NCBI RefSeq assembly: GCF_006345805.1
Contig: NW_021823828.1
Coordinates: 1-21,023 of the forward strand
DNA: 21,023 nucleotides
Direction: 5' to 3'
DNA from: Octopus sinensis
Taxonomy: Eukaryota
The position numbers and the translations under genes were made by a program. Positions 12,079-14,772 of this stretch are shown piece by piece. A model generated the notes under the pieces. The model searched no databases, was not told where the DNA came from, and saw nothing but the letters and a program-made list of their open reading frames with translations. Each line of letters opens with the position of its first letter. The stretch's first letter is position 1.

Positions 12079-14772
12079 ATGAGTAAAACTAAATTTCTAA
12101 ATTTAGATGAAAAAAGTTTGTTGAACGATCCCGATTTTTGCGGCTGAAATTTCTTATGTGTCTGATGACAATACACCAATAGATGTGGCGGAACATCCTC
12201 CTGACAAAGTATGTATCGTTTCCGGCGAGGAAGAGATAGATGAAAATGAACTTAGTGATAATTACCCAAATGATGTACCTGGATGCTTAGAAGATTCAGG
12301 AACAAATTCAACAGATCGAGTTAGGCCTGCAGCTAAACGTCGAAAGTGCAAAACGAAATCAAAGCCAACCTGGAATACACCACAAGAAGATTTTCATGGC
12401 GAGAGAGGAAATACTAATGCAATAAAGGATAGAATCACCAAAATAAAGAATCATTTCAAGGATCAATCCCCCGTAGAGGCTTTTCAAACACTTTTCGATG
12501 AAGATGTGATGACCAATATTCTTTTCTACTCTAGGCACAAATCCCAAAATTTTGGGGGAGGGGTCTGTCGATTAGATAGACCCTAGTACGAAACTGGTAC
12601 TTAATTGATCGTCCCCGAAAGGATGAAAGGCAAAGTCGACCTCGGCGGAACTTGAACTCAGAACGTAAAGACAGACGAAATACCGCTAACGTTTCTTATT
12701 TATTGAACCACAAGGGGCTAAACATAGAGGGGACAAACAAGGACAGACAAAGGGATTAAGTCAATTACATCGATCCGAGTGCGTAACTGGTACTTTATTT
12801 CGACCCCGAAATGATGAAGGGCAAAGTCGACCTCGACGGAATTTGAACTCAGAATATAAAGACAGACGAAATACCTATTTCTTTACTACCCACAAGGGGC
12901 TAAACATAGAGGGGACAAACAAGGACAGAAAAACGGATTGAGTCGATTATATCGACCCAGTGCGTAACTGGTACTTATTTAATCGACCCCGAAAGGATGA
13001 AAGGCAAAGTCGACCTCGGCGGAATTTGAACTCAGAACGTAGCGACAGACGTAATACCTATTTCTTTACTACCCACAAGGGGCTAAACACAGAAGGGACA
13101 AACAAGGACAGAGAAACGAATTAAATCGATTATATCGACCCCAGTGCGTAACTGGTACTTATTTAATCGACCCCGAAAGGATGAAAGGCAAAGTCAACCT
13201 CGGCGGAATTTGAACTCAGAACGTAGCGACAGACGTAATACCCATTTCTTTACTACCCACAAGGGGCTAAACACAGAAGGGACAAACAAGGACAGAGAAA
13301 CGAATTAAATCGATTATATCGACCCCAGTGCGTAACTGGTATATTTTTAATCGATGCCGAAAGGATGAAAGGCAAAGTCGACCTCGGCGGAATTTGAACT
13401 CAGAACGTAGCGACAGACGAAATCCTGCTAAGCATTTCGCCCGGCGTGCTAACGTTTCTGCCAGCTCGCCGCCTTAATGTGATGAGCAATATTGTAAGAC
13501 AAAATGTCATATATGCTACACAAATTAATTGACATAACTCTTCATTTTCGCTGGATTACTTGAGAAAGTTCATTGGATGGTTTTTACTGAGAGGCTTTCA
13601 TCACTTGCCACAAGAACAAATGTATTGGTGTGGGGATGTAGATGTAAAGATCCAGTTCGTTCGTGAACATTTGGTACGAAATAGATACATTGAAATGAAA
13701 AAAAATTGCACTTCAATGATAAGTCTACTCTTGGAACAGGCGCAATTCATAAAACCTTCAAAGTTGCACCACTAATTCAAATGATGAACGAAAAATTTGT
13801 GAAGTTTGGGGTTTTTTCAAAGCACCTGAGCATTGATGAACAAATCGGCAGTCATTTTCTGAAGCAATTTATAAGAGATTTGGATCTATGGAATGGGCAA
13901 TGTACTGCTCCACAAGTTATTGTTTTCGTGTTGCCTTGTATGAAGAACAAGATTCATCATTTGTATTAGGAGCTACAGTTGTTTTGAACAAAGTTTTGCA
14001 AATTCAGAATCCTTTAGATCACATACTTTACTTTGATAATTTTTTCTACAAGTTTTGAGCTAAAGAAAATACCGACTGAGAAAGAAGTTTCAGCTGCAGG
14101 AATAGTAAGAAGCAATCGAACTAATAAATGCCTACTTGTCCCTGATAACGATTTGAAGATCAAGGCTGAGGCTTCTATGATTACAGACTCGAAACATTGT
14201 ACTGAATAGTTGCCACTGTTTGGGAAGACGACAATAATGTGAAGATGCTTTCAAACTATCAACGTACGCTGTCAGCTGAAAGTGTGAAAAGGTGGAATAA
14301 ACAAATGAATAAGAATGTAAACGTACCACAGTCCACGTGTTTTGCTGAATACAATACTTTTATGGATGGAGCAGACAAAATGGATTGGGTAATCAATAAG
14401 TACAGGATCCAAATCCGCGCTGAGAGATGGTATTTTGCCATTTTCACCAACCTTATCGATATGGATGTTATGAATGCACATATTCTTTCCTGTATGGAAA
14501 ATGACAACATTCCTATTCTCGAATTCAGAAGAAGAATAGTCGAAGCCTATATGACTATTTCATCTTTATCTGATCCAAAAAATTCAGATCTACCTTCTTT
14601 GGGTAAAAAGTTTGAAAAGCGTGAAATCAGAAAGAATCAGTCTGGACACTTCTTGGAAAGAACTGATCTGGGAAAGCTAAGAAAGTGTGGTGTGTGCAAG
14701 AAATGTCAGGAAACAATGATCCAAGTGCAATGTAGGTTTGATCGTTCATTGTGTGAAGGCCTGATATCGATA
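12079..14772 (+). pseudogene. piggyBac transposase pseudogene (PGBD2/PGBD3-like), interrupted by the SINE array
   Basis: The acidic N-terminus (SGEEEIDENELSD) leads to SPVEAFQTLFDEDVMTNI, then resumes in frame after the insertion with VRQNVIYATQIN*...LRKFIGWFLLRGFHHLPQEQMYW. Further motifs are LSIDEQ (Asp codon 13835), LKQFIR, RFG..WAM, LGATVVL, LYFDNFF (Asp 14035), GIVRSNR, WEDDNNV, YNTFMDGADKMD (Asp 14374), RWYFAIF, EFRRRIV and Cys-rich CGVCK...SKCNVGL. Multiple stops, frameshifts and small deletions are present. Confidence 0.95.
12521..13476 (-). mobile_element. Head-to-tail pentamer of Nin/Deu-like tRNA SINE with one 17-bp TSD
   Basis: Five AACTGGT anchors at 12592, 12785, 12966, 13150 and 13334 give periods of 193, 181, 184 and 184. 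A complete tRNA-like head occurs only at about 13400-13476. The TSD is ATGTGATGACCAATATT (12504-12520) / ATGTGATGAGCAATATT (13477-13493). Confidence 0.95.

What the first reader, a model, noticed from the sequence alone, without database searches (positions are those of the whole stretch)
12504..13493. SINE pentamer with one complete head and one TSD, inserted cleanly into a piggyBac ORF
Seen: 956 bp between 17-bp direct repeats (one mismatch). Removing the insert and one TSD restores the transposase frame (DVMTNI-VRQNVIYA). Only the 5'-most unit has the full head. Three internal units start about 50 nt in (GGTATT.CGTCTGTC), keeping the B box (GAGTTCAAATTCC) but not the A box. The 3'-most unit has a partly deleted head and a different tail resembling type D. 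GAAAT occurs both at unit tails and in the head, a possible junction microhomology. Inference: either a multimeric SINE RNA retroposed as one unit (read-through, serial template jumping or a circular template), or a dimer later expanded in place. Multimeric SINEs acting as mobile satellite seeds would be a notable mode of propagation.
Basis: partly seen in the sequence, partly recalled or inferred. Interest (0 to 1): 0.7.

Follow-up and report, generated by a model that had tools for sequence, protein, structure and literature searches.

The report
SINE tandem array inside dead piggyBac
A short retrotransposon (SINE) that landed once inside a decayed piggyBac transposase gene now holds five head-to-tail copies of its body. 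The shared mutations show that at least the newest copy arose by ordinary DNA duplication, and the same layout has already been described in a clam and in reptiles.

Summary
A 956-bp insert (12521-13476, sense on the minus strand) lies between 17-bp direct repeats with one mismatch. Removing it restores a piggyBac transposase reading frame. It holds one full head, three body units that start about 50 nt in, and a last unit with a 12-nt head remnant and a different tail.

The "notable" interpretation is not supported for the array as a whole. Unit 2 is an exact hybrid: its 5' part matches unit 3 and its 3' part matches unit 1. One 184-bp period is therefore duplicated at 98.9% identity, with its breakpoint in mid-unit and not at the tail|GGTATT junction (permutation p = 0.0013). 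Private changes per unit are 7, 1, 1 and 22 (p = 3e-8), which excludes a single all-at-once copying of one template.

The best reading is one LINE-type integration of a composite SINE of two or three units, followed by growth through unequal exchange or replication slippage.

The same TSD-(SINE)n-TSD layout is published for the blood clam Scapharca broughtonii, and SINE-derived satellites are published for squamates.

No tool here holds this organism's genome. Whether junction-bearing multimers occur elsewhere, and whether the growth happened at this locus or at a source locus, remain untested.

The parts
12504..12520 (.). Target-site duplication, copy next to the SINE 3' end (ATGTGATGACCAATATT)
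   Evidence: 16/17 match to 13477-13493. P is about 7e-9 per placement.
13477..13493 (.). Target-site duplication, copy next to the SINE 5' end (ATGTGATGAGCAATATT)
   Evidence: Removing the insert and one copy restores the piggyBac frame.
13427..13476 (-). The only complete SINE head (first 50 nt, TAAGGCGGCGAGCTGGCAGAAACGTTAGCACGCCGGGCGAAATGCTTAGC). It contains an imperfect 21-nt internal duplication.
   Evidence: Not recognised as a tRNA.
13243..13426 (-). Unit 1 (184 nt): body with box-B-like motif plus the X-type tail ...GTAGTAAAGAAATG
   Evidence: It has 7 private changes, clustered in columns 72-86.
13059..13242 (-). Unit 2 (184 nt): hybrid unit. Columns 1-101 match U3 and columns 87-184 match U1. 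It is the youngest unit.
   Evidence: Site pattern 3333333311111113, permutation p = 0.0013. 13341-13140 matches its copy 184 nt downstream with at most 2 mismatches over 202 nt.
12876..13058 (-). Unit 3 (183 nt): X-type unit close to the unit consensus. It carries a T5 run at 12933-12929.
12697..12875 (-). Unit 4: the most diverged X-type unit, with variant tail ...GGTTCAATAAATA
   Evidence: 22 private changes. Alignment.
12521..12696 (-). Unit 5: 12-nt head remnant (12696-12685, AGAAACGTTAGC), body, and D-type tail ...CCCCAAAATTTTGGGATTTGTGCCTAGAGTAGAAAAG
   Evidence: The tail resembles the monomer at 10452-10672.
12158..12520 (+). Decayed piggyBac transposase, the part upstream of the insertion
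   Evidence: Pfam PF13843, E = 2.7e-22, on the rejoined protein.
13494..14838 (+). Decayed piggyBac transposase, the part downstream of the insertion (several stops and frameshifts; last ORF 14239-14838)
10452..10672 (-). Separate single copy of the same SINE family (D-type tail, full-length head). It is the only other clear copy in the window.
   Evidence: blastn 74-84% identity. nhmmer E = 8e-44. Sequence.

Best explanation
A LINE-type, target-primed reverse transcription event inserted a composite SINE into an already mobile-element-derived piggyBac transposase gene, antisense to it, and created the 17-bp target-site duplication.

The founder had at least two parts. One was a full-length 'X-type' SINE (head, body, tail ...GTAGTAAAGAAAT). 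The other was a 5'-truncated 'D-type' SINE (12-nt head remnant, body, tail ...CTAGAGTAGAAAAG). The much-diverged unit 4 may have been a third founder part. The X-to-D join was most likely made by the reverse transcriptase switching from the D-type RNA to the 3' end of an X-type RNA at a GAAA microhomology. This step is inferred.

The array then grew at the DNA level by unequal sister-chromatid exchange or replication slippage between the roughly 85-95% identical bodies. First came unit 3, a copy of the unit-1 lineage. Most recently came unit 2, formed when one 184-bp period running from mid-U1 to mid-U2 was duplicated. DNA-level duplication is shown for unit 2 and inferred for unit 3.

The result is a five-unit proto-satellite with no evident function. 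Its main effect was one more disruption of a dead transposase gene.
For: Single integration: one TSD pair joins the complete head of an X-type unit to the 3' end of a D-type unit. There is no non-SINE spacer or internal TSD. The empty site restores a colinear piggyBac protein.

DNA-level growth:
- U1 and U2 differ at 9 of 86 columns in the 5' part but at 0 of columns 87-184.
- U2 and U3 differ at 1 of 101 columns in the 5' part and at 7 of 84 in the 3' part (Fisher p = 0.006 and 0.024).
- The informative-site run test gives p = 0.0013.
- The hybrid has the 5' part of the downstream unit and the 3' part of the upstream unit. That is the orientation expected for a duplication product.
- The duplicated period is 98.9% identical (2 differences in 184) and its boundaries lie at 13157-13143, not at the junction.

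Stepwise history: private changes are 7, 1, 1 and 22 for U1-U4 (chi-square p = 3e-8).

Two subtypes: the U5 tail matches the monomer at 10452-10672, while the X segment is absent from both.

Precedent: the same TSD1-(SINE)n-TSD1 layout is published for Scapharca broughtonii (PMC11481361). Unequal recombination is the published explanation for SINE-derived tandem repeats (PMC10702118).
Against: - Timing relative to the insertion is not resolved. The TSD divergence (1/17) and the youngest duplicate (2/184) do not differ significantly (Fisher p = 0.23). The duplications could therefore have happened at a source locus before retroposition.
- The X-type tail is seen only inside this array in this window, so its status as a natural SINE 3' end rests on its resemblance to the D-type tail end.
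- The three short junctions lack the 7 nt expected from a GAAAT-microhomology join.
- U4 has far more private changes than a clock-like in-place copy of U1 would have.
- The copy number of a near-identical tandem array can be wrong in an assembly.
Confidence: 0.62

Rival explanations
1. The whole pentamer already existed at a source locus, where it had grown by the same DNA-level duplications. It was transcribed from the single complete head and retroposed here as one 956-nt unit. That would make it a mobile multimeric SINE.
For: One TSD pair bounds the whole array. The X-type units apart from U3 contain no T4 or longer run, so a polymerase III transcript could read through to the T4 in the D tail. 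Timing against the TSD is unresolved.
Against: U3 now carries a T5 terminator-like run. It is a private change, so this is weak evidence. No second copy of the X segment or of either junction occurs in the window. A 956-nt transcript is long for a SINE. This reading needs everything the best explanation needs plus one extra step.
Confidence: 0.17
2. All five units were made in a single reverse-transcription event. The enzyme either jumped repeatedly from about position 50 of a SINE RNA to the 3' end of the same or another SINE RNA, or copied a circular template round and round.
For: Every X-type unit ends at what looks like a natural SINE 3' end. The same 5' start (GGTATT) recurs three times. 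A GAAA microhomology is present at the U4|U5 junction.
Against: - U2 is a hybrid of its neighbours with mid-unit breakpoints (p = 0.0013).
- Private changes differ 22-fold between units (p = 3e-8), which does not fit copies made at one moment from one template.
- The identical start position is explained more simply by copying of a single junction.
- The head's GAAAT is 8 nt away from the short junctions.
Confidence: 0.06
3. Separate SINE insertions accumulated at one spot. Later copies integrated into the tail or head of earlier ones, or were resolved at their 5' ends by annealing to the resident homologous SINE.
For: Full-length SINE multimers formed by repeated insertion are known, for example Dip/B1 multimers of up to eight in a jerboa, as cited in PMC10702118.
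Against: No internal TSDs or spacers are present. Three units have an identical truncation point. The outer TSD pairs the first unit's 5' end with the last unit's 3' end. The hybrid structure of U2 is also unexplained by this model.
Confidence: 0.07
4. The copy number or the order of the near-identical units is an assembly artefact, and the true locus has fewer units.
For: U1, U2 and U3 share blocks of 99-100% identity over about 100-200 bp. Short-read assemblers handle such blocks poorly.
Against: The units carry ordered, unit-specific variants that give a coherent duplication history. The flanks and TSD are clean.
Confidence: 0.05

Closest known systems
TSD1-(SINE)n-TSD1 tandem SINE arrays of the blood clam Scapharca broughtonii (Mob DNA 2024, PMC11481361)
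   Same: One TSD pair surrounds the whole array. The first unit has the complete head, the internal units are all truncated at the same head position, and the last unit carries the terminal tail. Arrays hold 4-15 units, in a mollusc.
   Different: - In the clam the first and internal units are described as also truncated in the 3' tail, and the last unit has the same head truncation. Here the internal units appear to end at a full X-type tail.
- Here the last unit keeps 12 more head nucleotides and belongs to a different subtype (D-type tail).
- The SINE family here is not identified with any of the conserved-domain superfamilies of that paper.
SINE-derived satellites (sSat) of squamate reptiles (Vassetzky et al., Mob DNA 2023, PMC10702118)
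   Same: Tandem repeats are built from part of a SINE, with longer terminal units that reach the SINE termini. A minor variant has both termini. Units are 150-180 bp. The proposed origin is unequal homologous recombination. Short loci with variable units are seen as the first stage of satellite birth.
   Different: sSats reach up to about 1000 units, occur at many loci and favour subtelomeres. Here there is one locus with five units, in a euchromatin-like, transposon-rich setting. TSDs are not discussed for sSats.
Dimeric or complex SINE families that amplify as a unit (Alu and other dimeric SINEs listed in SINEBase), and chimeric retrocopies made by LINE reverse-transcriptase template switching (own knowledge)
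   Same: The founder here joins two SINE-derived modules head to tail inside one TSD pair. This is what a template switch, or retroposition of a dimer, would give.
   Different: Membership needs many genomic copies of the same dimer, each with its own TSD. That could not be tested. The later growth to five units happened at the DNA level, not by retroposition.
Full-length SINE multimers formed by repeated insertion (Dip/B1 in the jerboa Allactaga bullata, Int J Mol Sci 2021, as cited in PMC10702118)
   Same: Head-to-tail runs of up to eight SINEs.
   Different: In those runs the units are full length and independently inserted. Here only one unit is full length and no internal TSDs exist.

Membership tests
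SINE (LINE-mobilised short retroposon) | Head derived from a tRNA, 7SL or 5S RNA, with an internal polymerase III promoter (A and B boxes) | tested here: inconclusive
   A box-B-like GAGTTCAA[A/G]TTCC is present in all five units. Rfam found no tRNA, 7SL or 5S match at E up to 10. ARAGORN found nothing even when relaxed, or after removing the 21-nt internal repeat.
SINE (LINE-mobilised short retroposon) | Flanked by a variable-length target-site duplication typical of target-primed reverse transcription | tested here: met
   17-bp TSD, 16/17 identical. The clean empty site restores the piggyBac frame.
SINE (LINE-mobilised short retroposon) | Short, non-coding, interspersed in many copies | tested here: inconclusive
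   The monomer is about 220-235 nt and has no meaningful ORF. A second, diverged copy lies at 10452-10672, and two weak core matches lie at 6693-6762 and 2894-2970. Genome-wide copy number cannot be tested here.
SINE (LINE-mobilised short retroposon) | 3' region shared with a partner LINE | not testable with these tools
   No LINE 3' end with either tail occurs in the window, and no genome of the organism is accessible.
TSD-(SINE)n-TSD tandem SINE array / SINE-derived tandem repeat | Head-to-tail SINE-derived units with no spacer, bounded by one TSD pair | tested here: met
TSD-(SINE)n-TSD tandem SINE array / SINE-derived tandem repeat | First unit with a complete head, internal units sharing one head truncation point, last unit with the terminal tail | tested here: met
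   One deviation: the last unit keeps 12 extra head nucleotides and has a different tail subtype.
TSD-(SINE)n-TSD tandem SINE array / SINE-derived tandem repeat | Growth by DNA-level unequal exchange or duplication rather than by retroposition of each unit | tested here: met
   U2 is a hybrid with a mid-unit breakpoint (p = 0.0013). Unit ages are heterogeneous (p = 3e-8). This is shown for U2 and inferred for U3.
Satellite DNA proper | Long arrays at many loci, homogenised, heterochromatin-associated | not testable with these tools
   Only one five-unit locus is visible.
Multimeric SINE family that retroposes as a unit | Several genomic copies of the same multimer, each with its own TSD | not testable with these tools
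   None of the following gave a related copy: the protein-word search with a junction-spanning ORF, the DNA pattern scans of metagenome, genome and viral contigs, and the contig look-ups.
piggyBac transposase (the host of the insertion) | DDE_Tnp_1_7 domain | tested here: met
   PF13843 at E = 2.7e-22 for the N-terminal part and 3.7e-08 for the C-terminal part. piggyBat 9c0f at E = 3e-4. The gene is decayed.

The most novel reading that the evidence does not exclude
The X-D composite, or the whole pentamer, is a transcribed multimeric SINE that retroposes as a unit. It would then spread ready-made short tandem arrays around the genome as seeds for satellite DNA.
Probability: 0.12. Interest if true: 0.6.

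Novelty: new member of a known kind. Interest (0 to 1): 0.25.

Why it matters
This is a small, clean example of the first step from an interspersed repeat to a tandem repeat. The single TSD dates the array to one insertion. The ordered variants let the duplication steps be read off directly, including a hybrid unit with the orientation that unequal exchange predicts.

It adds a further case, probably from an invertebrate, to the clam and squamate examples. It changes no current view. It would matter more only if the same multimer proved to be mobile.

Tried and rejected
Searches for other copies of the SINE or its junction all failed:
- A protein-word search with the rejoined piggyBac N-terminus found no hit.
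- A protein-word search with a junction-spanning 54-aa ORF, used as a proxy to find SINE arrays among predicted proteins, found no candidates.
- A search with the piggyBac C-terminal part found one 45%-identical protein on a 1.7-kb Logan contig, with no SINE on it.
- Exact look-ups of two window ORFs found nothing on record.
- Scans with a 21-mer of the SINE core in metagenome, bacterial/archaeal genome and viral contigs gave only two chance 21-23-nt matches.
- Scans of viral contigs with the junction pattern and with a second SINE-type pattern found nothing.
- Full-text searches for 14 sequence strings from these SINEs found nothing relevant.

Head origin: Rfam on the whole window gave only low-complexity microRNA false positives. 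Rfam on the insert gave no tRNA, 7SL or 5S match. ARAGORN found nothing.

Readings I rejected:
- I tested whether the tail-to-body junction is an old contiguous sequence shared with the long SINE-like element at 2640-3010. Only a 23-nt block and the roughly 70-nt core align. The sequence between them does not.
- I tested U3 as a hybrid of U1 and U4. Its informative sites are interleaved, so it is not a simple hybrid.
- An inverted-repeat search for piggyBac termini returned only microsatellite noise.
- A six-frame Pfam scan of the flanks was abandoned, because the tool refuses translations that contain stops.

Full report
**1. What is there.**
The window is AT-rich and packed with microsatellites. 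Between 12158 and 14838 the plus strand encodes a decayed piggyBac transposase. Pfam DDE_Tnp_1_7 matches both the N-terminal and the C-terminal parts, and several stops and frameshifts interrupt it.

At 12521-13476 this gene is interrupted by a 956-bp insert. The insert is bounded by ATGTGATGA[C/G]CAATATT at 12504-12520 and 13477-13493. The chance of a 16/17 match at one placement is about 7e-9. Removing the insert and one repeat gives ...FDEDVMTNIVRQNVIYATQ.... Pfam matches this restored protein in a single colinear stretch. The piggyBat transposase 9c0f aligns across the join without a gap. The clean insertion and the TSD are therefore real.

**2. Anatomy of the insert.**
The element reads on the minus strand. 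It has these parts, in order:
- a 50-nt head at 13476-13427;
- four units of 179-184 nt (U1-U4), each made of a body and a 64-nt 'X' segment ending ...CCCCTTGTGGGTAGTAAAGAAAT, with a variant end in U4;
- a last unit, U5.

U5 opens with a 12-nt head remnant, AGAAACGTTAGC, which is identical to head positions 18-29. It ends in a different tail, ...CCCCAAAATTTTGGGATTTGTGCCTAGAGTAGAAAAG.

The U5 tail resembles the tail of the only other clear copy of this family in the window. That copy is a monomer with a full-length head at 10452-10672 on the minus strand. The last roughly 20 nt of the X and D tails resemble each other (TTGTG..TAG..AGAAA). I therefore read X and D as two subtypes of one family.

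Each unit keeps GAGTTCAA[A/G]TTCC, a box-B-like motif. The head is not recognised as a tRNA, 7SL or 5S relative by Rfam at E up to 10. ARAGORN does not recognise it either. 'tRNA-derived' is thus unproven. The head contains an imperfect 21-nt internal duplication with core GAAAYGYTTAGCA.

**3. Junctions.**
Three junctions are ...GTAAAGAAAT(A/G)|GGTATT... and the fourth (U4|U5) is ...AATAAATA-AGAAACGTTAGC|GGTATT....

The head's own GAAAT lies 8 nt upstream of the GGTATT/AGGATT point. A GAAA(T) microhomology join therefore predicts that GCTTAGC is retained. A variant of it (CGTTAGC) is seen only at U4|U5.

The final base of the short junction was originally A, as in J23 and J34. The G in J12 is private to U1. 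The apparent 'GAAATG' match to the head is therefore secondary. Whether the short form derives from the long form by a small deletion, or is an independent join, cannot be decided without the family consensus.

**4. How the array grew.**
The unit alignment shows a mosaic:
- U1 and U2 differ at 9 of the first 86 columns but at none of columns 87-184.
- U2 and U3 differ at 1 of the first 101 columns and at 7 of the last 84.
- At the 16 sites where U1 and U3 differ, U2 reads 3333333311111113. A permutation test on the number of switches gives p = 0.0013.

In sequence terms, 13341-13140 matches its copy 184 nt downstream with at most 2 mismatches over 202 nt. One 184-bp period, from mid-U1 to mid-U2, has therefore been duplicated at 98.9% identity. 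Its boundaries lie at about 13157-13143, in mid-unit and not at the SINE junction.

The hybrid unit has the 5' part of the downstream neighbour and the 3' part of the upstream neighbour. That is exactly the product of unequal exchange or slippage duplication: a1a2b1b2 becomes a1a2|b1a2|b1b2.

The units also differ greatly in age. Private changes are 7, 1, 1 and 22 for U1-U4 (chi-square p = 3e-8). U5 and the monomer serve as outgroups for the body. They show that most of U4's private body changes, and the GC at columns 16-17 shared by U1-U3, are derived. U3 is not a simple hybrid of U1 and U4. It looks like an earlier whole-unit copy of the U1 lineage.

A single burst of copying from one template, whether a rolling circle or serial jumps on one RNA, predicts a star-like pattern and junction-bounded units. 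It is rejected for the array as a whole.

**5. What entered in the original event.**
The one TSD pair joins the intact 5' end of an X-type unit to the 3' end of a D-type unit. There are no internal TSDs or spacers. A composite of at least X plus D therefore integrated in one event.

U4 may have been part of that composite. Its 22 private changes and its variant simple-repeat-like tail fit a separate template better than a clock-like in-place copy. A shared T at column 82 with U5 would instead fit an early U5/U1 hybrid. I could not decide between these.

The most economical origin of the X-D join is a reverse-transcriptase template switch at GAAA, or retroposition of a pre-existing dimer. This is an inference.

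**6. In place or at a source locus.**
The signature of DNA-level duplication would be inherited if the whole pentamer were copied from a source locus. The only internal clock is too weak to decide: the TSD shows 1 difference in 17 and the youngest duplicate shows 2 in 184 (Fisher p = 0.23).

A T5 run in U3 would stop polymerase III today. It is a private change, however, and may be recent. I prefer in-place growth because it needs fewer steps and matches published cases. I give the 'moved as a unit' reading about 0.17.

**7. Comparison with what is known.**
In Scapharca broughtonii, the 2024 Mob DNA study of bivalve SINEs (PMC11481361) describes multimers of the form TSD1-(SINE)n-TSD1. The first unit has a complete head, the internal units are truncated, and the final unit has the complete tail.

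Vassetzky et al. 2023 (PMC10702118) describe SINE-derived satellites in squamates. Their terminal units reach the SINE ends. They attribute the first duplication to unequal homologous recombination. They also note full-length SINE multimers in a jerboa and dimeric SINE families such as Alu.

The present locus is a further example of this kind. Its own features are two different tail subtypes within one TSD and a directly readable hybrid unit.

**8. Limits.**
No accessible collection holds this organism's genome.

The organism is not established. From memory only, the long SINE-like element at about 2640-3010 resembles an abundant octopus SINE. I did not test this.

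Noticed in passing
window 10452-10672 (-), flanks 10697-10706 and 10447-10456: A single copy of the same SINE family with a full-length head and a D-type tail. A perfect 10-bp direct repeat, TATTGTTATT, flanks it. The 5' copy lies 24 nt upstream of the head start, so its status as a TSD is doubtful.
   Followed up: partly
window ~2640-3010 (+): A long composite SINE-like element ending ...GAAACAAGTAAGAGTAAGAG, followed by (ATAC)n. 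It shares the roughly 70-nt core (CGATAGAATAAGTAC...TGGGGTCGAT...TCGA) and a 23-nt block (TGTCTGTG..TTTGTCCCC) with the array units. This suggests shuffling of modules between SINE families. From memory only, it resembles an abundant octopus SINE.
   Followed up: partly
window ~6640-6850 (-): Another SINE-like element ending in (AC)n, with a weak match to the same core (nhmmer E = 0.015).
   Followed up: no
window 13427-13468 (-): The SINE head contains an imperfect 21-nt tandem duplication (CAGAAACGTTAGCACGCCGGG / CGAAATGCTTAGCAGGATTTC; 10/21 overall, 10/12 in the core). It puts the A-like and B-like boxes about 21 nt further apart than in a tRNA. The monomer at 10452-10672 has it too.
   Followed up: partly
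window 12929-12933 and 12546-12549 (sense = minus strand): The only T runs of 4 or more in the sense strand of the array are a T5 in U3 (a private change) and a T4 in the D-type tail. Both are potential polymerase III stops.
   Followed up: partly
window 171-425 (-): An ORF remnant with a mariner-like ...HSAYSPDLASTDYQFF... motif. The motif call is from my own knowledge. Pfam gave no hit.
   Followed up: partly
whole window, e.g. 3012-3205, 4169-4773, 5699-5986, 19860-20501, 20754-20988: The density of microsatellites is very high: (ATAC)n, (AT)n, (CAC)n, (GT)n, and a 64-bp-period repeat at 20780-20988. All 118 Rfam matches at E up to 1 are low-complexity false positives, nearly all microRNA families such as mir-297, mir-466 and mir-3149.
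   Followed up: no
L003 (Logan SRR23076800 contig, 1736 bp): This is the only database relative of the piggyBac remnant: a 386-aa DDE_Tnp_1_7 protein, 45% identical, in a cluster of 10 unnamed members. No SINE is present on the contig.
   Followed up: partly
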